Positions 5,767 to 60,757 of a stretch of 64,000 nucleotides of DNA are shown piece after piece (within the stretch, counting starts at the first letter, position 1; the number at the start of each line of letters is the position of its first letter). The notes under the pieces were generated by a model. It worked only from the letters and a program-made list of their open reading frames with translations, was not told where the DNA came from and made no database searches. A program made the position numbers and the translations under genes. Source of the DNA: Octopus bimaculoides (lineage: Eukaryota); the NCBI RefSeq assembly GCF_001194135.2, contig NC_068989.1, positions 94,517,512 through 94,581,511 on the forward strand, in the 5' to 3' direction.

Positions 5767-5869
5767 TTTATATATATATATTTATATTTATATAAGCAAT
5801 GTTACTTCTCTAAATGAAGTATTAACAGTAACTGCACGATAAAGTGTAGTATATTGCCACTTAAGTGTG

Positions 5870-5965
5870 GCTGACCCCTAGGGGTGGATGTTACTGTTGC
5901 TTTTAGCCCCAGGAGGACATCTCCTCCAGCTGGCTTATCGACACACGACTGTGTCCTGTTTGCCA
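5870..5965 (+). mobile_element. Half copy of the fold-back MITE family seen at 28803
   Basis: tgttgcttttagccccaggaggacatctcctccagctggcttatcgacacacgactgtgtcct matches the left arm of 28803-29002. Confidence 0.65.
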
Positions 5966-6999
5966 AGGGAGTTATCCCTCTCACCTCGACCAGCAGCACG
6001 AACGTATCCGGATTTCAGGGTTATTTCCCTTCGTCGGCGTTCGACAGNNNNNNNNNNNNNNNNNNNNNNNNNNNNNNNNNNNNNNNNNNNNNNNNNNNNN
6101 NNNNNNNNNNNNNNNNNNNNNNNNNNNNNNNNNNNNNNNNNNNNNNNNNNNNNNNNNNNNNNNNNNNNNNNNNNNNNNNNNNNNNNNNNNNNNNNNNNNN
6201 NNNNNNNNNNNNNNNNNNNNNNNNNNNNNNNNNNNNNNNNNNNNNNNNNNNNNNNNNNNNNNNNNNNNNNNNNNNNNNNNNNNNNNNNNNNNNNNNNNNN
6301 NNNNNNNNNNNNNNNNNNNNNNNNNNNNNNNNNNNNNNNNNNNNNNNNNNNNNNNNNNNNNNNNNNNNNNNNNNNNNNNNNNNNNNNNNNNNNNNNNNNN
6401 NNNNNNNNNNNNNNNNNNNNNNNNNNNNNNNNNNNNNNNNNNNNNNNNNNNNNNNNNNNNNNNNNNNNNNNNNNNNNNNNNNNNNNNNNNNNNNNNNNNN
6501 NNNNNNNNNNNNNNNNNNNNNNNNNNNNNNNNNNNNNNNNNNNNNNNNNNNNNNNNNNNNNNNNNNNNNNNNNNNNNNNNNNNNNNNNNNNNNNNNNNNN
6601 NNNNNNNNNNNNNNNNNNNNNNNNNNNNNNNNNNNNNNNNNNNNNNNNNNNNNNNNNNNNNNNNNNNNNNNNNNNNNNNNNNNNNNNNNNNNNNNNNNNN
6701 NNNNNNNNNNNNNNNNNNNNNNNNNNNNNNNNNNNNNNNNNNNNNNNNNNNNNNNNNNNNNNNNNNNNNNNNNNNNNNNNNNNNNNNNNNNNNNNNNNNN
6801 NNNNNNNNNNNNNNNNNNNNNNNNNNNNNNNNNNNNNNNNNNNNNNNNNNNNNNNNNNNNNNNNATATATATATATATATATACGTACACACTCACACGT
6901 GCAAAGCTACAAAACTCTAACGGGTTTCGCAACAGCATACATTTCCCTCACATCTCATATGCACGACCTGTTGGCTAGAACCGTAGACAGAGTGTCAAA

Positions 7000-10422: not shown

Positions 10423-10710
10423 GAATCTAAAAACAGAAACAATTCCTATCATAGTAGGTGCCTTAGGTATAATAAAAAAATATTCAGACAAATACATAAC
10501 AAAAACACCAGGACTTACAAATATATATAACATACAGAAAATTGCACTACTGGGTACTGCACACATTCTACGCAAAACACTTTCAATACAGTAAACATAA
10601 GAGCACCACAGCAAACCACAGCACATACCCAAGGCGCACAGAGCTGCGCTCGGTAGTGAAGTGAAAGCACGTTATAAAAATAAAACTACTGAATAATAAT
10701 AATAATAATA
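10423..10710 (+). mobile_element. R4/Dong-like LINE 3' end with 3' UTR and (AAT)n tail
   Basis: NLKTETIPIIVGALGIIKKY...IQKIALLGTAHILRKTLSIQ* is the typical PIVVGALG / QK..LLGTAHILR terminus of R4/Dong ORFs; uninterrupted in the visible part. Confidence 0.85.
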
Positions 10711-27108: not shown

Positions 27109-28802
27109 TAAACATCAGAAGCTCCAAACACCAAACTTCGTAGGACGTTTCCGAGTGACAGCAGTTCTTGGAATAGCTCACGTCGTGAGAAAAGTGCAGC
27201 TCCGCCAATTTGCGGAATGGAATTGAGACGTGACACAGACAATTCAGGAGAAGATAAGATGATAGATAACATTAAAATACATGTTTTTTACGCTAATGTT
27301 GACCGAGCAAGGTTTAATTCAAATGAGCTTTAATTAGTTCCAACAGGAACATTTGTGAAGAAAAATAACTTTATATGCAAGCATGTTTGTATCTGCGATT
27401 GTAAATTTCTGAAAATCTTTTTTTGAGCCGCATTGTCGGCAAAATGACATACCTAATGTTATATTATCTTCCTCATATGAATCAAGCTTGTGATATTTTT
27501 AAAATAAGAATTGAAAATTTTAAATATATGTACGAAAGAGAAAATTATACGTGTTATGTATTTCTGTTTGCATATAATGTCTGTTAAATTACTAAAACCT
27601 GTAAATAATATTTGAAATATTTTATATATAAATACACACATAATGTCAATAATATTGTGAAGCTCATATCTTGAACCTTTGCACTTAAATTCCCTAATAG
27701 AACATGTTATTGATAGATTTTAGGTTGTCTTACACGTATTACGTTTTTTCATCCTTTTATACGAGAAATCTTTTCGTACTGTATTGTGTTCGTCCTCTGT
27801 TGGATGTATGCATTTTTGCTATGTTTTACAAGTTTTCTTGTTAATATAATCATATATTCCACAGTGATTGTGCATTTGATTCATACAATACTATTTACGT
27901 GCTGATATTCCATTTGCCTCTTTTTTGATATCTCATTTGCAGTATATTTGTGTATTTTTCTATGACTTGGTCTATTAGTTGTATTACTACTGTTCATTAG
28001 TGACTATTTTATGCAGTATTTCAATTGAAGATAAGTTACTAAATGATCTTTTGGACAGATACTCTGGCACTAACAAATTTATTGTTCAATGTCAGTGTTT
28101 AAGTGCAGAGATGTCTTTCTTTCTTTCCTTATTTCTTTTTATTATTTTTATTTATTTATTTTTATTATAGACGATATCTATTTTTAACTGAAAATTTGTC
28201 CAGAAATGGGGATAATATCACTGAAACTTTATACATAATCTATAATGGCTATTGAATTGTACTGCGAACATCATAGCTTCTTTTAATCTCTTCTCATTTT
28301 GCAGTGTCTTCCATGAGAACATTATTACTAATACAAATTGTGTATATTGTATGATCAAGATTACTATTAATATGCGTTTCTACAACGGCCAAAGAGAATG
28401 AACGAGGTAACCTAAGGAATAAACCAGAATACACCATTCTGGTTTAGACACTTCACTGTGACACCAACGAAATATTTCTGGTTTTCTCAAACACTAATAT
28501 AAACGCGACACGGATATAATTTTCAGTAAATTAGCCTATATAAATTGATGGTATTATCATATTTGCGCAAGAAATATCTGGTATGAAGTGGAAAAACTTG
28601 AAAATGCATATGTATAAAGCCAGAAAGTTCTGTTAAATTTTTGACACGATCTCTTTAAGAGAATTATTTTCTCAACGCTTACGGTAACAGAAAAAAAAAA
28701 TTTTTTATTAGAAATTTTCTATTTTTAAATCTCACAACGACAGATATTCAGCAACAGTGCTTTGGAGTATAGATTGTTTGCCAACATAACATGGCAGTCA
28801 TC

Positions 28803-29002
28803 GTTTAGGACGAATGTTGCTGTAATTTAGCCCCAGGAGACATCGTCTCCAGCTGGCTATACGACACGATCTGTGTCCTTATATTTTCGAACAAGAGGTG
28901 CTAGCTTCCCTTGTTTGAAACTATAAGGACACAGATCGTGCCGTAAGGCTACTTGGAGACTATGTATCCCGGGGCTAAATTACAGCAACATTCGTCCTAA
29001 AC
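28803..29002. mobile_element. Fold-back MITE, ~200 bp, near-complete hairpin
   Basis: gtttaggacgaatgttgctgtaatttagcccc..gacacgatctgtgtccttata inverted with tataaggacacagatcgtg..ggggctaaattacagcaacattcgtcctaaac. Confidence 0.85.
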
Positions 29003-29129
29003 CAGGACTGACATGTTATGTTGGAAAATAATCTTTACACTAAGTTTTTATATTCCAATGTGTTTCTCTCTGTGCAGAGCATTTTAAATCATAGTAGTTA
29101 AATTCATATCGATTTTAATCTTTTCAAAT

Positions 29130-30095: not shown

Positions 30096-30246
30096 AAATA
30101 CATACATAAAGACCAGAGAAGCATTTGCTTCTTTTCCATCTTGAAATATGACAGCTCTTTCGAAACTCATATTTAACTACTGTCCTTCCATAGCACTTAC
30201 ATAGCGTTACCAGCCACCTTGGGTCTTCTGGAGACCAATACTTCTC

Positions 30247-30331
<85 letters not shown>

Positions 30332-30339
30332 TGCGTATG

Positions 30340-30535
30340 TGATTGTCCCGCGGCATCGTTTGACAACCGATTCCGGAATGTTTACATCCCCGAAACGTAG
30401 CAGTTCGGCAAAAGAGAACGATAGAATAAGTACTAAACTTACAAAGAATGAGTCCTGGTGTCGATTTGCTCAACTAAAGGCGGTGTTCCAGCATGGCCGC
30501 AGTCAAAGGACTGAAACTAATAAAAGAATAAAAGG
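30340..30535 (+). mobile_element. Family-2 SINE 3' half downstream of a (TG)n tract
   Basis: tgacaaccga..gcagttcggcaaaagagaacgatagaataagtacta..ggcggtgttccagcatggccgcagtcaaaggactgaaac. Confidence 0.8.
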
Positions 30536-30566
<31 letters not shown>

Positions 30567-34810: not shown

Positions 34811-35130
34811 GCGTCTGAGTGGTAAGAAGCTTGCTTCCCAACCACATGATTCTGGATTCAGTCTCACTGCGAGGTATCTTGAGAAAGTGTCTTCTGTGTA
34901 TCTGTGTCTGTAAGAGTCTTTCTTTGTTCCCAACCACTCCGTGACAACCGGTGTTGGTGTGGCTCCGTCCGCATTACCTACGTTAGGCGAAAAAAAGCGA
35001 TAGACTATATGTCAAGCTTTAAAAAATAAATAAATAATGGGATCGATACTTACGTTTAAAATCCTTCAAGGTGGTGCCCCTGCATGGTCGCAGTCTAATG
35101 CATGAAGCAAGTAAATGGATAAAAGACATA
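34811..35130 (+). mobile_element. tRNA-derived SINE, family 2, near full length
   Basis: Head gagtggtaagaagcttgcttcccaaccacatgattctggattcagtc (A/B boxes), tail ccttcaaggtggtgcc..catggtcgcagtc. Confidence 0.8.
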
Positions 35131-38710: not shown

Positions 38711-38982
38711 GTAGGAATGAAAATCGTGTACGTCTACGGCTGGCTAGAAAGATTGCTTGCTTACTAGCAATTTTGGTATATTCAGCTGACACCAAAAGCT
38801 AAAAAACCTCTAGGGTGTTGTTGACTGACGCTACAAACATGCATTGTTTCAGTGTTAATGAATACTCCTCCTTGGTATTATGAGGACCAAAAGAAAATGC
38901 ATTTCAAAATGTTTCTATGAACTTCTATATAAAAAAATTATCATGTGATAGAATGGTGTCACCTTCATATGACAGTCACGTG

Positions 38983-39043
38983 AAAGGGAAGAGTGCTACT
39001 GTTATTTATCCCCAGGGCTAAATAACAGTAGCATTCTTCCCTT
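38983..39043. mobile_element. Mini-palindrome made only of fused terminal repeats related to the 28803 MITE family
   Basis: aaagggaagagtgctactgttattta-tcccaggg-ctaaataacagtagcattcttcccttt; shares the tgct.ctgt..tttagcccc.gg motif. Confidence 0.65.
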
Positions 39044-39744
39044 TTATGGAACTGTCACATTAAGTTCACAACATACTATCACTTTATCGTGCTGCTACTG
39101 CATAAATCCCTCTGAGAGATTTAGAAATGTATTATTTCTATTTTCAAGAAATTATCACTCTCATAACATAAACTTACAACCAAGTTTCTTTATCGGTCAA
39201 ACATTAAACCACTTTAAATATGTAAGAAGTATTATGAATAGCACTGAAACTTTAAATCTGAAATATTCTTCAGTATACAAAAGCAACTCTGAAGCTGAAA
39301 TCAAAGTTCGAAATTGGTCAACAGGACAATCTCTTACCTCGGTTGCTAGCGTTCAAATTGCATTCGAAGTGTCGACACAGAGCAACAGGAAACCGCCGTT
39401 CCCACATTCTCAACAGTCCTGTTTCTTAAACATATAAGTACGCTGGACATCTTCGATCGCATCCAAAGACAGACTAATCGGCATGAACATAGGACCAATA
39501 GAGATTCGTCTCAGTGTCTTGTCGATTACTTCAACAATTTTACCCCAAAATAGTTAACGCTCACGAATTCCATCCGATTAGTTTTCTGCATCTGGAAGAA
39601 AATTTGATTTTAATACCTGCACATTTATGGTAATCCATTCGCCTTGCAGGAATATCTAAAAGTAAAGTTAAGAAATAGTCTAACTTCCCATCTAATAATC
39701 AGAATTAATTAAACGAAACCAAAACTTTTTATTTAACATTGAAT

Positions 39745-39935: not shown

Positions 39936-40429
39936 TTTGTGTGTGTGTGTGTTTAATTACTGAAAGAAAATGTACCCTGTTGAATCGAAGGAAAACTCAA
40001 AATAACATTTAGGCATATTTATCAACTTACCAAATGTTTTCTTATAAAAAAACAAACTGGAAACAATCATGTTGCACAACTTTTTTCTCTAAATATAATT
40101 AAAGTTGTCTTACCTGCAATTTTGTCTCTTAAGATAAAAATGATTACAAGAGAGAAATTTTCAGCGTTTTCACTCATTTTCCTTTATAATAAAACATTAT
40201 ACACCACTTCCCGAAACACATTTTTTTCCTAAAGATAGGATCTAGAGTATATATAGGAAATATCGTCGATTTTAAAGCCATTAACCAATTTAAATCGCAA
40301 TACACTCTACAATATTAATGTACCGAATTTATAAACAAAAAACCTTGGGCTAATTTTATGCTCATTGGAGAGAGTGTCTATATGTGTATGTATGTATGGA
40401 TGTAAATATGTACGTATACATATACATTA

Positions 40430-40635
40430 TTCTTTTATTTGTTTCAGTCATTTGACTGCGACCATGCTGGAGCACCCCCTTTAGTCGAGCAAATCGACCT
40501 CAGAACTTATTGTTTGTAAGCCTGGTACTTATTCTATCGGCCTCTTTTGCTGAACCACTATGTTACAGGGACATAAACAGACCAGCTTCGGTTGTCAAGT
40601 CATGTTGGGGGGGACAAGCACTGGCACACAAACAT
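40430..40635 (-). mobile_element. Family-2 SINE 3' half
   Basis: gtttcagtcatttgactgcgaccatgctggagcacc..agtcgagcaaatcgacc. Confidence 0.8.
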
Positions 40636-42299: not shown

Positions 42300-43075
42300 A
42301 TAGTGTCAAAACACCGACTTATATACATCGACTTTCACCTTCAACGATAGGTCATGGCTGATCCAATGCATGTGGTGAAGCTTACCGAAAGTGGAACTAG
42401 CCTTCTCAGTTCTGAGCTCAATTCCTTAATCCATCAATGGACACAATGGAACCACGGTACGTGAAGAAGGAAACAGTTTTTAATGCTTTCTCATCAACAT
42501 ATACATTAAGGACAACAGTGGAAAGATGGTCACGAATGGGCTGATAGACAAGCTCAGTTTTCTTGATGCTGATGGTCAGACCAAAACCCTTCGATGCACG
42601 CGAGAATCTGTTTAAAATATATTGCAATTCCTCAAGAGTGTGTACTACGAGTGCATAATCGCCTGCGAATCAAAGTCTGTTTTTGCTTTGAAGCGTTGTT
42701 GGTTGAATAAGCCACTTCCAGTTCTGTACTCAAACTTTAATCCTTTAACATTTTCGAACGCTGTTTCCAAAATGGTCGGGAAATGCAAAGAAAATAAGAG
42801 CGGTGCAAGAACACAGCCTTGTTTCGCCCAATTTGAGACTGTGAGTGAGTTGGATACTTCCCTACTAGATCTAGCAGGAGTCAACATCCCTTGATGGAAA
42901 GAAATGATGACACTGAGTATCTTTTTAGAGTACCTAGCTCTTCAAGGGCACCCCAAAGGAAATCTCTAGATACGGTGTCGAAAGCTTTAGTTAGACCAAC
43001 AAAAGTGGCAAAAATGCCTCGGTTGTGCTCACGAGTTTTTTTCTGCTGTTGCCTCAGGCTGAAAATCATATCTGA
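42300..43075 (-). mobile_element. RTE (BovB-like) LINE reverse-transcriptase fragment, decayed
   Basis: IFSLRQQQKKTRE..FVGLTKAFDTVSR, KQGCVLAPLLF, YRTGSGLFNQQRFKAKT, FGLTISIKKTE, FTYRGS are standard RTE RT motifs. Confidence 0.9.
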
Positions 43076-43764
43076 AAGAAATGTGTTGGTTACGTACGTA
43101 TATCCAACTTCATTGCAACCATTCCTTTCAATTTGTTTCAGACAAGAAAAATTAAAATGTTCAACCCTGAAGAGAATTACTAGAATTAAAAAAATTAAAA
43201 CTGAGAATTGGATGAATGGAATCTTTCATAGTGTTTTGTAAATTCAAAATCCGCCTCCTTTGTAATGATAGCTCCTTGCCTATGAAAATGCAAGAAATTT
43301 AGAGGAAAGGGTTATGTATGTAGGCTTCAATACTGAAATGATGTTCGATTTATAGCTGTCTGATGTATAAGAAACAATGTTGGTCTCGACAGGATTTGAA
43401 CCCAGAACGTGAAGAGCTGGAAGAAATATCGCAAGGTCTTCTTTAAATTCCCAGCCCCCTTCTACTCTTAGTTATACTAATAATTTCTAATATAGCACGA
43501 TGTCAACAGATTTGGAGAAATACCCTTGTCAATTACATCACCTCAAACACGTGTGTAATACTTTATTTTAGAGTAATTTTTAGGATGAATAGTGAATTTC
43601 CACTAGATGGCATTTGAACCCTGGACATAAAAATCTAGATGAAAAAGAGTAACACGTGGCGTTTGTTCGATACTCTAATGACTTTCTCTTTATCCAATGG
43701 CCTCTTCTCCTTTACTTCGTAATAATATACAACGCAGCTGATAAATACATTTGGATAGAATATT

Positions 43765-53467: not shown

Positions 53468-53660
53468 TACTCTTTTACTCTTTTACTTCTTTAAGTCATT
53501 TGACTGCGGCCATGCTGGAACACCGCCTTTAGTCGAGCAAATCGACCCCAGGATTTATTCTTTGGAAGCCTAGTACTTATTCTATCTGTCTCTTTGGCCG
53601 AACCGCTATGTTACGGGGACGTAAACACACCATTATCGTTTGTCAAGCAATGTTGGAGGC
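53468..53660 (-). mobile_element. Family-2 SINE 3' half
   Basis: tactcttttactcttttact..gtcatttgactgcggccatgctgg..agtcgagcaaatcgacccc..ccgaaccgctatgttacgggg. Confidence 0.85.
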
Positions 53661-54624: not shown

Positions 54625-55184
54625 NNNNNNNNNNNNNNNNNNNNNNNNNNNNNNNNNNNNNNNNNNNNNNNNNNNNNNNNNNNNNNNNNNNNNNNNNNNN
54701 NNNNNNNNNNNNNNNNNNNNNNNNNNNNNNNNNNNNNNNNNNNNNNNNNNNNNNNNNNNNNNNNNNNNNNNNNNNNNNNNNNNNNNNNNNNNNNNNNNNN
54801 NNNNNNNNNNNNNNNNNNNNNNNNNNNNNNNNNNNNNNNNNNNNNNNNNNNNNNNNNNNNNNNNNNNNNNNNNNNNNNNNNNNNNNNNNNNNNNNNNNNN
54901 NNNNNNNNNTATATATATATATATATATAAAAATGGATTTAAACGCAGATGTTATTCAAATTCTTTTACTTCCGACACATGTTTCGAAGATATCACTGGT
55001 ATTATTCCAAAAGAATAAAATGGTGTAAAACAATGTAATTTAAAATTAGTTTCTTTTTTCAACATTTGTGTATTCATTAGCTAAGTCTCATATAAAATGA
55101 TTTATTGTTTTAATCCTTGAATTAAATGAGGTTTAGATTTACTGTTAGGTGACTTTTGGCCAACCCTGTATATATATATAATAT

Positions 55185-55380
55185 CTTTTAATCACTTGTG
55201 TCAGTCATTAGCCTGCGGCCATTCTAGGGCACCGCCTTAAAGAACATTTACTCGAATTAATAAACGCATTACTCATATTTTTAAAAAAATCTGGTATTCC
55301 ATTGGTCTCTTTTGATCAATTACGGTGACGTAAAGACACCAATGCTAAGTGTCAAATCGATAGCGCGAAGAAACACGGAC
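55185..55380 (-). mobile_element. Family-2 SINE 3' half (head lies at 55782-55930)
   Basis: tcagtcattagcctgcggccattctagggcaccgcc..ttacggtgacgtaaagacacc..gtcaaatcgatagcg. Confidence 0.7.
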
Positions 55381-55408
55381 ACGCACGCATGCACGCACGC
55401 ACACACAC

Positions 55409-55439
<31 letters not shown>

Positions 55440-55450
55440 CNNNNNNNNNN

Positions 55451-55494
<44 letters not shown>

Positions 55495-55495
<1 letters not shown>

Positions 55496-55762
55496 TTAGG
55501 TAAATAATCCTTCGATCAGACGGTCAGTACCGACGCCTGCTGGGTTCGCCTGATCTACATTGATAAGAGGCAATACCTCGAAACTAGTCTGTAGATGCCA
55601 GACCAGCAAAGGGAAGCGGCTGACCTCCCCTGTTCGAAGGTTATAATGGACACAGATTCGTGTGTCACATAGCTAGCTATAGGCGATGACCTCTTGGAGA
55701 TAATCGACGGCAGTATTCGTCCTATTTTTGGACTGCCATGTTGGCTTGGCGATAACTATTAA
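55495..55762 (+). mobile_element. ~265-bp structured hammerhead-bearing insertion (retrozyme or non-autonomous PLE-like)
   Basis: GC-richer non-coding segment inserted in the internal CA/TA tract of a SINE; contains a hammerhead, a long rod and three small hairpins or palindromes. Confidence 0.55.
55554..55595 (+). ncRNA. Type-I hammerhead ribozyme, U3-A8 core variant
   Basis: TCTACA(helix I)-TTGATAA(core)-GAGG caata CCTC(helix II)-GAAA-CTAG-TC(GUC, cleavage after 55589)-TGTAGA(helix I'); helix I extends about 50 nt further. Confidence 0.8.
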
Positions 55763-55781
55763 TATATATATACATATATAC

Positions 55782-55930
55782 TCCACAGGCTTTCAGTTTC
55801 CGTCTACGAAATTCACTCACAAGTATTTGGCCGGCGCTAGAATGCAGTAGAGGACACATGGCCAAATATGCCACGCAGTGGAACTGAACCCAGAACCATG
55901 TGGTTGAAAAATAAGCTTCATACCCCGCAA
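55782..55930 (-). mobile_element. Family-2 SINE tRNA-derived head
   Basis: ctttcagtttccgtctacgaaattcactcacaag..gccacgcagtggaactgaacccagaaccatgtggttg. Confidence 0.8.
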
Positions 55931-56159
55931 CTATATATAAGTATATATATATATTTCTATATGCAAGAGGAAGTGTTCAAATGTAAGTGGAAACATTCTC
56001 TGCGGAACAAATCTGTTGTAGTTCAGGCTTCCACTGCTTAATTCAATCCTCAGGCATCAGTCTGCCGACCGGCAATGTCGTATGGGGCAGTATTGCTATG
56101 TAGTGCGTCTTTCTGTTGCTGTGCTTCTCCCTTGTTCGTCAATTTTTGTAGTGGTTGAA

Positions 56160-56540
56160 ACGAAGCTCTAGGAATGGTCATTTGTCGCTTTAAGAGCAAT
56201 CTCGTTCAGGACGGCGTCGACTTCATGGACGAATGAAAACATCATGAAAATTCACGAACTGATCGTAGAAGATCGTCACCAAACAATTGAGGAACATATC
56301 CTGACAACGAATTTTGAGTGAGGAATTGGGAATGAAAAGAGTTACATCAAAATGTGTGCCTCGCTTGCTCACGGAAGTTCAAAATCAGTCATGACAGAAT
56401 GTGTGTCGTGAACTGAAAGAACAGGTGGAAGTTGACCCAGACCTTTTTCGAAGGTCACCCATCACTGGTGACAAAAGCTGGTGCTATGCAGATGTAGAAG
56501 AGGTGAAGAAAAAACGACGAGGTTTCAAAAGCCATCCCTT
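56160..56540 (+). mobile_element. Internally deleted mariner transposase remnant
   Basis: DENIMKIHELIVEDRHQTIEE, ELGMKRVTSKCVPRLLTE (cf. WVPRLL), PITGDKSWCY (cf. TGDETW), DVEEVKKKT. Confidence 0.8.
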
Positions 56541-57145
56541 TGCACTGGTAATAATTCATTACTAAAAATAGTCTTTAAACGAACGACCATCAATATGTCA
56601 CATTCCGATATGCTGTTTTTGTTTCTTGCTGTTATTATTCAACATCTGTGTTCTTTCTTTTAACAGCATATATTTGATGGAATTTGTAGAGTATTTTTAG
56701 CTGGTATAGCCATAGCGTTTAAATGTTTGATTGAAAGTACCCCATCACACTATTTGATTAGAATCCATAGAAAATTAAAAATGTCCTCATGGAAATATTG
56801 GCTCCACGTTTCTCGATAATGTAAGCTAGTGTTTGCAATATACTCTTAGGAATATTTTATTGAAGTTCTTATAAATCAACATGTATGTTATTGCCATCTT
56901 TTCACTGAAGAAAAGGAATATATTTTATATAATGTTTTTATGCTTATATCACAAGAAGTAAATTTTTAGAAGGACAATATGCGATAGACTTGACAGTCAT
57001 CTGCATTCACGCATTTACTCATTCCTCCCTTTCTCACTTTCTCTCTTTCTCAGGAAATATATCTATGTGCGTAAACAATGCATTTATATGTGTATTAATA
57101 TATTAATATATGCTTAAATATATGCACATACATGTACACCCCCCC

Positions 57146-59355: not shown

Positions 59356-59373
59356 TAGATAGATAGATCGATC

Positions 59374-59439
<66 letters not shown>
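59356..59439. repeat. (GATA)n microsatellite that truncates the mariner
   Basis: Directly visible. Confidence 0.97.
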
Positions 59440-59440
<1 letters not shown>

Positions 59441-60238
59441 TACCCAAAAAGCTGAGATGGATGAGACTGCCCGCAGACCACCAAACAGTTACCATGACCT
59501 TCTTTTGGTGCAACTTTGGCTTCGGAAAGTGCCGTGGAGATTCGTCGGCGTCTAACCACTGAGCCCATCGTCGCCGGTTGTCGTAAATAATTCACTTTTA
59601 ATCGCAAGTCATATTCCGGTCGAGAAACGGGTCGTTCTTGTCGCGTAAAAGAAGAGAAGACGACACTTCAAAATGGCTTTTTAACATTTTTTGTCGTTCA
59701 ATTCGTGCGGCACCCATTCCTAAAGTATTTTTGTTTTTCCAATCTCTTTCAAGTGGTTGGAAATTGTCGTACGCGTTACGTCTAATTCAGAAGCAAGTTC
59801 TCGAACAGGTGTGCGTGGATTGGCTTCGACTAAGGCTCTTCGTTGATCGTTGTCAACATCCGATGGCCGACCACTACGCTTATCATCTTCAAGACCGCTA
59901 CGAAATTTCTTGAACCACCATTGTACTGTACGTTCATTAGTGGTTCCCGGATCAAATGCATCGTTGATATCGCGAACTGTTTCGGCAGTTTTTTGGCCTT
60001 GCTTGAACTGGAATAAGAAAATTGTGCGAATTTGCTTCTTGTCCATGTTGTATTCAACGTTCCGGAAAAAATCGACCTAATTGTTCAAAACGAAAACGAG
60101 TAAGACGATTAGATAGAGCGAAAAACGGGCTTTAAAATAATATGTAAAGTCAAAGTAATGTAACGAATATTAATTTGAAAATACATAAATTAAAACCCAA
60201 ATTTAAATTTCTGCAAGAACTTTCTTGACAACCTAATA
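59440..60238 (-). mobile_element. Mariner transposon 5' half: terminal repeat plus frameshifted transposase
   Basis: TA-TTAGGTTGTCAAGAAAGTT terminal repeat at 60238; MDKKQIRTIFLFQFK..ERTVQWWFKKFRSG..RSGRPS (HTH, ORF 59720-60046); WVPHELND, PFLDRNMTCD, PKPKLHQKKVMVTVWWS. Confidence 0.93.
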
Positions 60239-60261
60239 TATATATACCCCCCACACACACA

Positions 60262-60757
60262 CAAATATATATTCATATCACTATTCAACAAGGCCAACGA
60301 CATAACCATTGTTGATCTCTGCAGGACTCCACAATCACCTCTAATGTGCTCTGAAGAATGCCTCAACAAAATCAAGTCATTTCTTCAAAAATACGACTCC
60401 GGAAACATACTGGTGATGGGTGATTTTAACCTGCCTTATATAACCTGTCCCACAAATACTCTGAAGTTAAGCAACTGCACTTCACCAGACAAAGCAACAG
60501 CAGAATTACTCTTTAATCTCATGGATGAATTTTTCCTCTCGCAGCTAGTCCTCGAAACTAGACAGAATAAAACAATCTTGGATCTAACATTAGCAAACTA
60601 CTGTATCTCCATTCGCAGCATTTCAACTAAAAAGACTCTCTCCTCGGACCACGACATGATACTCAGCAAGTTTAATTTCTGACATATCAAAACCAAACCA
60701 GTCAATTGCACCCCACTGCACTTGAAGATATAAATTTACACAAAGTGGACTGGGAGC

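What the first reader, a model, noticed from the sequence alone, without database searches (positions are those of the whole stretch)
55505..55643. Apparently complete hammerhead ribozyme capping a ~140-nt rod: retrozyme-like RNA candidate
Seen: ATCTACA/TGTAGAT helix I, core, GAGG/CCTC helix II, GAAA, ACTAGT, GUC. Helix I continues through CTG/CAG, TGCTGG/CCAGCA, CCG/CGG, GGTCAG/CTGACC, CAG/CTG, CCTTCGA/TCGAAGG and TAA/TTA, with internal loops near the ribozyme. Established: type-I hammerheads use a helix I bulge to loop II contact for activity, and small non-coding hammerhead retroelements (retrozymes) of a few hundred nt yield structured circular RNAs in some animals. Inference: this is a member of such a family, unrelated in sequence to the other hammerheads here. 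Only one ribozyme copy is visible, so circle formation from this locus alone is not implied. Novelty is unverified.
Basis: partly seen in the sequence, partly recalled or inferred. Interest (0 to 1): 0.85.

Follow-up and report, generated by a model that had tools for sequence, protein, structure and literature searches.

The report
Solo hammerhead ribozyme retroelement copy
This is most likely a real but variant-core hammerhead self-cleaving RNA motif carried by one stranded copy of a small non-coding retroelement family, a kind already known to be abundant in animal genomes, so it is a nice example rather than a new phenomenon.

Summary
The motif is not "complete", though. Its core reads UUGAUAA, not CUGAUGA. 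C3 and G8, which pair with each other in the active ribozyme, are both changed, to a compensating U3-A8. No Rfam hammerhead model matches it, even at E<=10.

It is still far beyond chance. A relaxed type-I descriptor finds exactly two hits with a palindromic helix III in the window, against 0.02 expected from shuffles. The second hit (5999-6043, minus strand) belongs to the same repeat family. Across 13 comparable base pairs it differs on both sides at 8, and none is broken.

The candidate lies in a discrete 268-nt insertion (55495-55762) inside the (CA)n/(TA)n microsatellite of a SINE on the opposite strand. It has no tandem partner. Two other family copies are head-to-head inverted, 5'-truncated fragments.

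These traits match Penelope-like elements and their non-autonomous relatives, the non-LTR retrozymes. A natural U3-A8 core is already published for Penelope-like elements.

Verdict: a solo, probably dead-end monomer of such a family, and a new member of a known kind. Cleavage activity, circle formation and any link to a Penelope-like reverse transcriptase are untested. Interest is about 0.3.

The parts
55495..55762 (+). Element A: a discrete 268-nt insertion (GC 47%) holding the rod with the hammerhead plus a 3' arm
   Evidence: It is bounded by (CA)n on the left and (AT)n on the right. The left flank aligns with the 3' half of a SINE (score 90; shuffles 19.8 +/- 3). By eye, and against my memory of the cephalopod SINE, the right flank is the SINE head.
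55505..55643 (+).
   Evidence: MFE -49.9 kcal/mol, z -3.67. The active conformation is iso-energetic with the MFE.
55553..55559 (+). Helix I, 5' strand (AUCUACA)
55560..55566 (+). Core positions 3-9: UUGAUAA (U3 and A8 in place of C3 and G8)
   Evidence: The U3-A8 covariation is documented in nature in PMC4209133.
55567..55579 (+). Helix II GAGG/CCUC (G10.1-C11.1 kept) with loop 2 CAAUA
   Evidence: The Schistosoma hammerhead has the same 4-bp helix II and an A/U-rich loop, CAAAUA.
55580..55588 (+). G12 A13 A14, then helix III ACUAGU (A15.1 to U16.1). This is a 6-nt palindrome, 2 bp plus a 2-nt 'loop', which cannot close within one molecule.
   Evidence: Cofolding two copies forms an intermolecular ACUAGU helix: -30.0 kcal/mol against 2 x -12.2.
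55589..55589 (+). C17; the predicted cleavage is 3' of this base (GUC triplet)
   Evidence: Position read
55590..55596 (+). Helix I, 3' strand (UGUAGAU)
55644..55762 (+). The 3' arm shared by all family copies. It has four weak local hairpins and is not significantly structured on its own.
   Evidence: nhmmer E 1.2e-32 against the arm profile, which includes this copy, so inflated; independent single-sequence match to B E 3.1e-12. Arm z -1.0. Only 4 of 24 predicted pairs show compensatory change.
55392..55492 (.). (CA)n target microsatellite on the left flank, holding a 10-N assembly gap at 55442-55451
55762..55780 (.). (AT)n target microsatellite on the right flank
55185..55400 (-). 3' half of the host tRNA-type SINE that element A interrupts
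   Evidence: Local alignment to the SINE copy at 30330-30540: score 90 against shuffles 19.8 +/- 3, max 33
55786..55930 (-). 5' (head) half of the same host SINE
   Evidence: Sequence read. One related copy lies at 34821-34880. That this is the head of the same SINE rests on my reading and memory.
5999..6043 (-). Copy C hammerhead: CGAACG | CCGACGA | AGGG-AAAUAA-CCCU | GAA | AUCCGGAU | A | CGUUCG. It has U4->C in the core, an AUA site and an 8-nt palindromic helix III. An N gap starts 4 nt upstream.
   Evidence: The descriptor found it independently. Versus A, 8 of 13 pairs are changed on both sides and 0 are broken.
5852..5962 (-). Copy C 3' arm
   Evidence: nhmmer E 2.5e-28 against the arm profile, which includes this copy, so inflated; independent single-sequence matches E 4e-05 (A as query) and 1.2e-06 (B as query)
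28771..29034 (.). Copy B: two 5'-truncated copies joined head to head, with no hammerhead. It forms a near-perfect foldback of about 255 nt.
   Evidence: Fold -176.6 kcal/mol, z -22. Both arms hit the family profile. Arm-to-arm identity is 87-92%.
38954..39073 (.). Copy D: a shorter head-to-head pair of more deeply 5'-truncated copies
   Evidence: nhmmer E 5.6e-06 and 2e-05 on the two strands. Arm-to-arm identity is 80%. Sequence.

Best explanation
The motif at 55553-55596 is a genuine descendant of a type-I hammerhead ribozyme of the metazoan 'dimer' type. It has a 7-bp helix I, a 4-bp helix II and a 2-bp helix III closed by a palindrome. It carries the compensated U3-A8 version of the C3-G8 core pair.

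It belongs to a dispersed, non-coding retroelement family. Each copy consists of a rod with the hammerhead followed by a ~110-nt arm (plus a short tail in some copies). The family is of the kind mobilised by Penelope-like element (PLE) machinery: non-LTR retrozymes, which are derivatives of PLE pseudo-LTRs.

Inferred mechanism for active family members:
1. A transcript with two ribozyme copies, or two transcripts together, pairs the palindromic helix III sequences (ACUAGU) to build a double hammerhead.
2. Each ribozyme cuts after C17, leaving a 2',3'-cyclic phosphate and a 5'-OH.
3. Unit-length RNA can be ligated into a highly paired circle, or used directly as a template.
4. A PLE reverse transcriptase/endonuclease copies it into microsatellite targets. 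This produces 5'-truncated copies and head-to-head inverted copies.

This particular copy (55495-55762) is a solo monomer that landed in the (CA)n/(TA)n tract of a SINE. It has no tandem partner, so it is most likely a dead-end insertion. At best it could cleave weakly in trans if it happens to be transcribed.

Shown here: the fold, its non-random occurrence, family membership, covariation, the insertion boundaries and the inverted truncated copies. Inferred: cleavage, dimer use, circularisation and the PLE as the mobilising partner.
For: 1. All helices and 9 of 11 invariant core bases are present. The two departures are the two partners of the C3-G8 pair, changed to U-A.
2. The descriptor gives 2 palindromic-helix-III hits against 0.02 expected, and no shuffle reaches 2.
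3. The second hit, C, lies at the homologous position of the same family. Helices I, II and III differ from A at 8 of 13 pairs on both sides, with none broken.
4. Two copies cofold into the double hammerhead with an intermolecular helix III, 5.6 kcal/mol better than two monomers. The active fold is iso-energetic with the MFE of the 139-nt rod.
5. A is a clean insertion between (CA)n and (AT)n inside a SINE.
6. B and D are head-to-head inverted 5'-truncated copies whose two arms are sisters: 87-92% and 80% identity within a locus, against 54-70% between loci.
7. The hammerhead lies about 170 nt (A, which lacks the tail) to about 230 nt (copies carrying the ~60-nt tail) from the shared 3' end.
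8. Published PLE traits match. PLE insertions show 5' truncation, an adjacent inverted truncated copy, a bias toward (CA)n/(TA)n microsatellites, hammerheads in the pseudo-LTR and assembly gaps (PMC8557442). A natural U3-A8 core was found in about 1,300 Schistosoma PLE-type motifs, and the canonical metazoan type-I architecture is helix I 6 bp, helix II 4 bp, helix III 1-2 bp plus a 2-4-nt palindromic loop (PMC4209133).
9. Retrozymes are related to PLE pseudo-LTRs, and their monomer derivatives are common (bioRxiv 10.64898/2026.07.22.740005).
10. The Schistosoma hammerhead AF036740 has the same layout: GUCC-CAAAUA-GGAC, then GAAACGCGUC.
Against: - No Rfam hammerhead model matches A or C, even at E<=10.
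- The U3-A8 core is expected (from memory of Przybilski & Hammann 2007, which I could not fetch) to be slower than C3-G8. PLE-type dimer hammerheads cleave poorly in vitro.
- C has U4->C, which probably inactivates it.
- None of the four loci shows a tandem repeat.
- No PLE RT or GIY-YIG ORF was seen. Ten inspected ORFs gave only a LINE endonuclease and a mariner transposase.
- GC is 47%, slightly above the <45% quoted for retrozymes.
- The covariation rests on only two sequences.
- With 4-10% decay per copy (from the divergence of the B and D arms), two fully intact hammerhead folds are only mildly unexpected.
- No sequence from outside the window could be obtained.
Confidence: 0.7

Rival explanations
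1. The four loci are 5'-truncated 3' ends (the pseudo-LTR part) of an autonomous Penelope-like element, not of a small non-autonomous retrozyme-type element. In full-length copies elsewhere in the genome, the hammerhead would be the PLE's own 3' ribozyme, next to an RT/GIY-YIG ORF.
For: - The copies form a truncation series: A and C are long, B is shorter and D is shortest. B and D have a head-to-head inverted arrangement.
- A tail-like 3' extension, ending in ATTTAGAAAT, is present at some ends only. This matches the PLE 'tail' described in PMC8557442 and PMC11167929.
- U3-A8 cores were first described in PLE-associated motifs.
- PLEs occur in Octopus species.
Against: - The helix sizes (I 7 bp, II 4 bp, no unpaired base after A9) are those of 'canonical' retrozyme-type hammerheads. 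PLE min-HHRs have helix II of 6-8 bp, helix I of 4-5 bp and a bulge after A9.
- Element A starts only ~10 nt before the base of the rod, as expected for a complete small unit.
- No PLE ORF fragment lies next to any copy.
Confidence: 0.2
2. The family is a foldback/MITE-type DNA transposon with long terminal inverted repeats (as seen in B and D). The hammerhead-like centre is then a relic or a coincidence with no RNA-level role.
For: - B is a near-perfect 255-nt palindrome (z -22), and D is a shorter one.
- Long palindromes commonly suffer central deletions, which could explain the loss of the centre in B and D.
- The arm itself shows little RNA covariation.
Against: - A has a right arm but no left arm, although its insertion boundaries are clean.
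- The centres of B and D sit at different positions of the arm, as expected for independent 5' truncations.
- The hammerhead helices covary between A and C with none broken, which points to selection on RNA.
- No target-site duplications were evident (not tested rigorously).
Confidence: 0.06
3. The motif is a chance hammerhead look-alike at the tip of an ordinary repeat-derived hairpin.
For: - The core is not the consensus.
- Rfam models are silent.
- The window is AT-rich and full of inverted repeats, and a large genome will contain relaxed matches by chance.
Against: - Expectation is 0.02 per window for the relaxed descriptor with a palindromic helix III, and 0.005 for the strict form; two were observed.
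- The two hits are homologous in position within one repeat family and covary.
- The two core changes in A are exactly the partners of one core base pair, and they stay Watson-Crick.
Confidence: 0.04

Closest known systems
Non-LTR retrozymes of animals (Cervera & de la Pena 2020, PMC7229834; Li et al. 2026 preprint, 10.64898/2026.07.22.740005)
   Same: - A type-I hammerhead with canonical helix sizes and a tiny palindromic helix III that needs a second copy.
- A non-coding unit of a few hundred nt (268 nt here; 150-450 reported).
- Helix I continues into a highly paired body.
- Dispersed 'monomer derivatives' are described as common, non-mobile offspring.
- The family is related to PLE pseudo-LTRs.
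   Different: - No head-to-tail tandem array at any of the four loci in the window.
- GC is 47%, against <45% reported.
- The core is U3-A8 rather than C3-G8.
- Head-to-head inverted copies are present.
- Expression as circular RNA is unknown.
Hammerheads in the pseudo-LTRs of Penelope-like elements, including the U3-A8 core variant of Schistosoma Cercyon-type elements (Cervera & de la Pena 2014, PMC4209133; Craig et al. 2021, PMC8557442)
   Same: - The U3-A8 covariation of the core pair.
- A palindromic 15.2-16.2 / loop 3 and a G10.1-C11.1 pair.
- Very high sequence variability between copies, with compensatory changes.
- Mostly single dispersed motifs.
- 5'-truncated and inverted copies.
- Microsatellite targets and assembly gaps.
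   Different: - PLE min-HHRs typically have a long helix II (6-8 bp), a short helix I (4-5 bp) and an unpaired base after A9. Here helix II is 4 bp, helix I is 7 bp and there is no bulge.
- No RT/GIY-YIG ORF is linked in the window.
Schistosoma Sm-alpha and newt satellite-2 hammerheads (classical type-I satellite / SINE-like hammerheads; sequence AF036740 as printed in PMC5666329)
   Same: - A 4-bp helix II with an A/U-rich loop 2: CAAAUA there, CAAUA (A) and AAAUAA (C) here.
- GAAA followed by a 6-nt palindrome and C17: ACGCGU-C there, ACUAGU-C here.
- Activity as dimers.
   Different: - Those families are tandem satellites with C3-G8 cores and defined loop1-loop2 contacts.
- Here the copies are solo, the core is U3-A8, and the helix I internal loop (a 2-3-nt asymmetric bulge 7 bp from the core) is of unknown competence.
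Plant LTR retrozymes and viroid-like circular RNAs
   Same: Self-cleaving hammerheads embedded in highly base-paired non-coding RNAs that parasitise a retroelement or replicase.
   Different: - Those carry type-III hammerheads with a stable helix III.
- They have LTRs with PBS/PPT or are RNA-only replicons.
- Their GC exceeds 55%.
- No sequence relationship to this element.

Membership tests
Hammerhead ribozyme, type I | Three helices around a junction, with helix I open and helices II and III closed, in the order I - core - II - GAAA - III - H17 - I | tested here: met
   Helix I is 7 bp, helix II is 4 bp and helix III is A-U plus C-G. The same layout is found in copy C.
Hammerhead ribozyme, type I | Invariant core bases U4 G5 A6, A9, G12 A13 A14, A15.1-U16.1 and H17 | tested here: met
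   All are present in A: U55561, G55562, A55563, A55566, GAA 55580-55582, A55583, U55588 and C55589. Copy C fails at U4 (C instead).
Hammerhead ribozyme, type I | The C3-G8 core base pair | tested here: inconclusive
   A has U3 and A8. Base identity is not met, but Watson-Crick pairing is kept. This exact covariation is reported in natural PLE-type hammerheads (PMC4209133). A C3G/G8C double mutant partly restores cleavage in another PLE hammerhead (PMC11167929).
Hammerhead ribozyme, type I | A match to the curated covariance models (the Rfam hammerhead families) | tested here: not met
   No hit at the gathering score in the window. No hammerhead hit at E<=10 around A or C.
Hammerhead ribozyme, type I | Mg2+-dependent self-cleavage 3' of H17, and a helix I bulge / loop 2 tertiary contact | not testable with these tools
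   Only indirect evidence is available. A 2-3-nt asymmetric bulge lies 7 bp from the core, and loop 2 is A/U-rich, resembling the Schistosoma loop.
Non-LTR retrozyme (animal) | A canonical type-I hammerhead with a weak palindromic helix III | tested here: met
   The architecture matches the description in PMC4209133 and PMC7229834.
Non-LTR retrozyme (animal) | Head-to-tail tandem repeats of 150-450-bp units | tested here: not met
   TRF finds only microsatellites in 55150-56050. Self-BLAST finds no adjacent copy. Loci B and D are inverted, not tandem. Caveats: N gaps at 55442-55451 and directly upstream of C, and monomer derivatives are known for such families.
Non-LTR retrozyme (animal) | Low GC (<45%) and a highly self-paired unit | tested here: inconclusive
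   GC is 47%. A hypothetical circular unit folds to -78.4 kcal/mol with 61% of bases paired and z -2.2.
Non-LTR retrozyme (animal) | Expression as small circular RNA | not testable with these tools
   No transcript data were reachable. The source genome appears absent from the protein and contig collections.
Penelope-like element (3' end / pseudo-LTR) | Linkage to an ORF encoding a PLE reverse transcriptase and a GIY-YIG endonuclease | tested here: not met
   No such ORF lies near any copy. Pfam on 10 ORFs gives only Exo_endo_phos_2 (a LINE endonuclease) and mariner domains. The test covers this 64-kb window only.
Penelope-like element (3' end / pseudo-LTR) | The PLE insertion signature: 5' truncation, an adjacent inverted 5'-truncated copy, an optional tail at one end, and microsatellite targets | tested here: met
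   B and D are head-to-head truncated pairs. A lies between (CA)n and (AT)n. A tail ending in ATTTAGAAAT is present in B_R, C and D but absent or unclear in A and B_L.
Penelope-like element (3' end / pseudo-LTR) | min-HHR architecture: long helix II, short helix I and an unpaired base after A9 | tested here: not met
   Helix II is 4 bp, helix I is 6-7 bp and there is no bulge, in both A and C.

The most novel reading that the evidence does not exclude
A cephalopod-lineage family of small hammerhead retroelements in which a canonical-architecture type-I ribozyme works with a U3-A8 core. Tandem or master copies elsewhere in the genome would be processed into rod-like circular RNAs. This would be the first retrozyme family built on the U3-A8 core and the first described in cephalopods. 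Its long duplexes might also be substrates for the extensive RNA editing of these animals.
Probability: 0.2. Interest if true: 0.55.

Novelty: new member of a known kind. Interest (0 to 1): 0.3.

Why it matters
If the reading is right, this locus adds a mollusc (probably cephalopod) family to the catalogue of hammerhead-bearing retroelements. It also gives a natural test case for the U3-A8 core in an otherwise canonical type-I scaffold. That helps show how much core variation hammerhead searches miss: Rfam's models did not see either copy.

The locus also shows, within one 64-kb window, the insertion habits attributed to Penelope-like machinery: microsatellite targeting, 5' truncation and head-to-head copies.

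It does not open a new question. This copy is most likely an inert monomer.

Tried and rejected
1. Rfam cmscan of the whole window at the gathering score, and at E<=10 around A, around C and over the whole window. There were no hammerhead hits around A or C. For the whole-window E<=10 scan only the best 150 of 274 matches are shown, and none of those is a hammerhead. The many sub-threshold miRNA hits are microsatellite artefacts.

2. A covariance model built from A alone (R1) and run over the window with filters off. It finds only A. It is too sequence-specific to detect C, so it was uninformative.

3. MAFFT alignment of the two hammerheads. It misaligned the 3' half, so I did the structural comparison by explicit parsing instead.

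4. Attempts to reach more of the source genome all failed:
   - An exact-protein look-up of a LINE ORF found nothing on record.
   - A homology search with the LINE endonuclease ORF returned no hits.
   - A degenerate 22-base arm pattern against metagenome contigs returned 0 hits.
   The source genome seems absent from these collections, so copy number, tandem arrays and PLE linkage could not be tested.

5. ARAGORN on 55150-56050 found no tRNA. The tRNA origin of the SINE head is therefore not confirmed by tool, and element A has no tRNA-like head.

6. I looked for a left arm of A that would make a long foldback like B. nhmmer finds none upstream.

7. I considered that the arm is a conserved structured RNA. 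Support is weak: z -1.0, and only 4 of 24 pairs are compensatory.

8. I tried to fetch Przybilski & Hammann 2007 on C3-G8 exchanges, but it is not held.

9. I assigned the window to an octopus-like cephalopod from memory of its abundant SINE. This is consistent with the in-window copies, but no tool verified it.

Full report
**The observation**

- helix I: ATCTACA (55553-55559) with TGTAGAT (55590-55596)
- helix II: GAGG/CCTC around the loop CAATA (55567-55579)
- GAAA at 55580-55583
- the palindrome ACTAGT at 55583-55588
- a GUC triplet ending at C55589

The 139-nt stretch folds to -49.9 kcal/mol, z = -3.67, and none of 200 dinucleotide shuffles does as well. The opposite strand also folds well (z = -4.05) but into a different shape, and it holds no ribozyme-like motif. 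Forcing helices I and II while keeping the core unpaired costs nothing relative to the minimum-free-energy structure.

C3 is U and G8 is A. So the motif is not 'complete' in the usual sense. No Rfam hammerhead model matches it at the gathering score or at E<=10.

**Is it more than chance?**

I wrote a type-I descriptor with these rules: core CUGANGA with at most one mismatch, or the compensated U3-A8 form; an optional bulge after A9; helix II of at least 3 bp; GAAA; a compact helix III; U16.1 then H17; and helix I of at least 5 bp.

On both strands of the window it gives three hits. Two have a perfectly palindromic helix III: the candidate, and a second motif at 5999-6043 on the minus strand. 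The third hit (about 3250, minus strand, G5->A, not palindromic) is what chance predicts, since shuffles average 0.2 hits.

For palindromic hits, 200 dinucleotide shuffles give a mean of 0.02, and none gives two. For the strict form (canonical or U3-A8 core, helix I >=6) the mean is 0.005. No motif with a canonical CUGANGA core exists anywhere in the window under these rules.

**The second motif belongs to the same repeat family**

Self-BLAST and nhmmer show that the ~110 nt to the right of the rod (55644-55754) recur at three other places:
- 5852-5962, minus strand (copy C)
- 28776-28882, minus strand, with an inverted partner at 28923-29027 (copy B)
- 38958-39066, on both strands (copy D)

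In the alignment of A, B and C, the hammerhead of C falls at the position of the hammerhead of A. C reads CGAACG | CCGACGA | AGGG-AAAUAA-CCCU | GAA | AUCCGGAU | A | CGUUCG.

Of the 13 base pairs that can be compared between A and C, 5 are identical, 8 differ on both sides while staying paired, and none is broken. This is the pattern described for animal hammerhead families, 'consensus families full of covariations' (PMC4209133). It rests on only two sequences. C has one core change (U4->C), and an assembly gap starts 4 nt upstream of it.

From the divergence between the two arms of B (8-13%) and of D (20%), copies have decayed by roughly 4-10% each. At that rate one core hit in C is unremarkable.

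A's two hits are different. They fall on exactly the two partners of the C3-G8 pair and restore a Watson-Crick pair. By my rough estimate that has a probability of order 10^-3 under random decay. So the U3-A8 core was more likely inherited from a functioning lineage (inference).

**What the element is**

Element A has clean boundaries. Its left flank is (CA)n and its right flank is (AT)n.

The sequence left of the (CA)n, reverse-complemented, aligns end to end with the 3' half of a SINE that is intact at 30330-30540. The score is 90, against 19.8 +/- 3 for shuffles. The sequence right of the (AT)n reads, by eye, as the reverse complement of that SINE's head. So a 268-nt unit (55495-55762, GC 47%) was inserted into the SINE's internal microsatellite, on the opposite strand.

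The unit begins about 10 nt before the base of the rod and ends at the end of the arm. It has no tandem neighbour and no tRNA-like head.

Copy B is a near-perfect 255-nt foldback (-176.6 kcal/mol, z = -22). It is made of two arms joined head to head just 3' of where the hammerhead would be. Copy D is the same arrangement, truncated more deeply.

Within a locus the two arms are 80-92% identical. Between loci the figure is 54-70%. So each foldback arose at its own insertion. A further ~60 nt ending in ATTTAGAAAT follows the arm in B (one side), C and D, but not clearly in A.

**Comparison with what is known**

The traits are:
- a hammerhead some 170-230 nt from a shared 3' end
- a series of 5' truncations
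- an inverted truncated copy abutting another copy
- an optional short tail at one end
- insertion into (CA)n/(TA)n
- assembly gaps at the copies

These are the published signature of Penelope-like elements (PMC8557442; PMC11167929). The U3-A8 covariation of the core has been reported in about 1,300 PLE-type motifs of Schistosoma (PMC4209133).

The helix sizes, however, are those of the 'canonical' animal type-I hammerhead. That is helix I of 6 bp, helix II of 4 bp, and helix III of 1-2 bp capped by a 2-4-nt palindrome. This is the type carried by non-LTR retrozymes (PMC7229834). The long-helix-II min-HHR typical of autonomous PLEs looks different.

A recent preprint places retrozymes as non-autonomous derivatives of PLE pseudo-LTRs. 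It reports that solo monomer derivatives are common and probably immobile.

The Schistosoma hammerhead AF036740, as printed in PMC5666329, has the same layout: GUCC-CAAAUA-GGAC followed by GAAACGCGUC. Compare GAGG-CAAUA-CCUC followed by GAAACUAGUC here.

I found no paper in the searchable library that describes hammerheads in cephalopods. PLEs are reported from Octopus species. I assign the window to an octopus-like cephalopod from my memory of its SINE, and no tool verified this.

**How it most likely works**

Helix III (ACUAGU) cannot close within one molecule. Two copies cofold into a double hammerhead with a 6-bp intermolecular helix III, at -30.0 kcal/mol against -24.4 for two separate monomers. 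This is how such ribozymes are thought to act in tandem transcripts.

In active family members, cleavage after C17 would release unit-length RNA. That RNA can be circularised or copied by a PLE reverse transcriptase/endonuclease into microsatellite targets. These steps are inferred from the families cited, not shown here.

The copy in question is single. It carries a core expected to be slow, and it sits antisense inside a SINE. I consider it a dead-end monomer.

**Rivals**

- It could be the truncated 3' end of an autonomous PLE rather than of a small non-autonomous unit (0.2). The window cannot decide this. No PLE ORF is present, and ten ORFs gave only a LINE endonuclease and a mariner transposase.
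- It could be a foldback DNA transposon with a relic centre (0.06). This is disfavoured by A's lack of a left arm despite clean boundaries, and by the covariation in the ribozyme helices.
- It could be a chance look-alike (0.04). This is disfavoured by the shuffles and by the homologous, covarying second copy.

**Limits**

Nothing outside the window could be reached. Copy number, tandem arrays, PLE linkage, expression and cleavage all remain untested. The arm shows little evidence of conserved RNA structure.

**Verdict**

This is a genuine hammerhead-family motif with a documented core variant, in a solo copy of a PLE/retrozyme-type element. It is a new member of a known kind, of modest interest.

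Noticed in passing
window 5999-6043 (-), N gap 6048-6864 directly upstream: A second hammerhead-like motif (core CCGACGA, AUA site, 8-nt palindromic helix III AUCCGGAU) in the same repeat family as the candidate. The ~800-N gap next to it could hide more of the element or tandem copies.
   Followed up: yes
window 28771-29034: A near-perfect 255-nt foldback (-176.6 kcal/mol, z -22) made of two head-to-head 5'-truncated copies of the family arm. If transcribed, a duplex this long would be a strong double-stranded RNA.
   Followed up: partly
window 38954-39073: A shorter foldback of the same family (arms 80% identical), truncated more deeply. It carries the ATTTAGAAAT-type tail on at least one side.
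   Followed up: partly
window 30180-30540 (+), 53472-53652 (-), 40427-40598 (-), 55185-55400 and 55786-55930 (-): Several copies of a composite SINE with an internal (TA)n(TG)n microsatellite between its head and its 3' half. From memory it matches the abundant octopus SINE, which suggests a cephalopod source. ARAGORN does not call the head as a tRNA.
   Followed up: partly
window 59358-60076 (-) and 56395-56562 (+): Remnants of a mariner/Mos1-type transposase at 59358-60076: HTH_48 (E 8.6e-16) and Transposase_1 (E 3e-16). A further fragment at 56395-56562 looks mariner-like by eye but has no Pfam hit.
   Followed up: partly
window 60194-60679 (+); 42648-43225 (-); 10427-10591 (+): A LINE-type endonuclease ORF at 60194-60679 (Exo_endo_phos_2, E 7.5e-10). 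The ORFs at 42648-43225 look like reverse transcriptase by eye (FDTVSR and GCVLAP motifs), and the one at 10427-10591 looks like a retroelement C-terminus. Neither of these has a Pfam hit.
   Followed up: partly
whole window: Extreme microsatellite density (TA, CA, AAT, AAG, AGT, GATA/GACA) and 5.6 kb of N gaps, most of them inside microsatellites. The 274 sub-threshold Rfam hits (mir-297, mir-3149 and others) are artefacts of these repeats.
   Followed up: no
window ~3250 (-): A third, weak descriptor hit (core with G5->A, helix I 5 bp, helix III not palindromic). This is consistent with the chance expectation of 0.2 per window.
   Followed up: no
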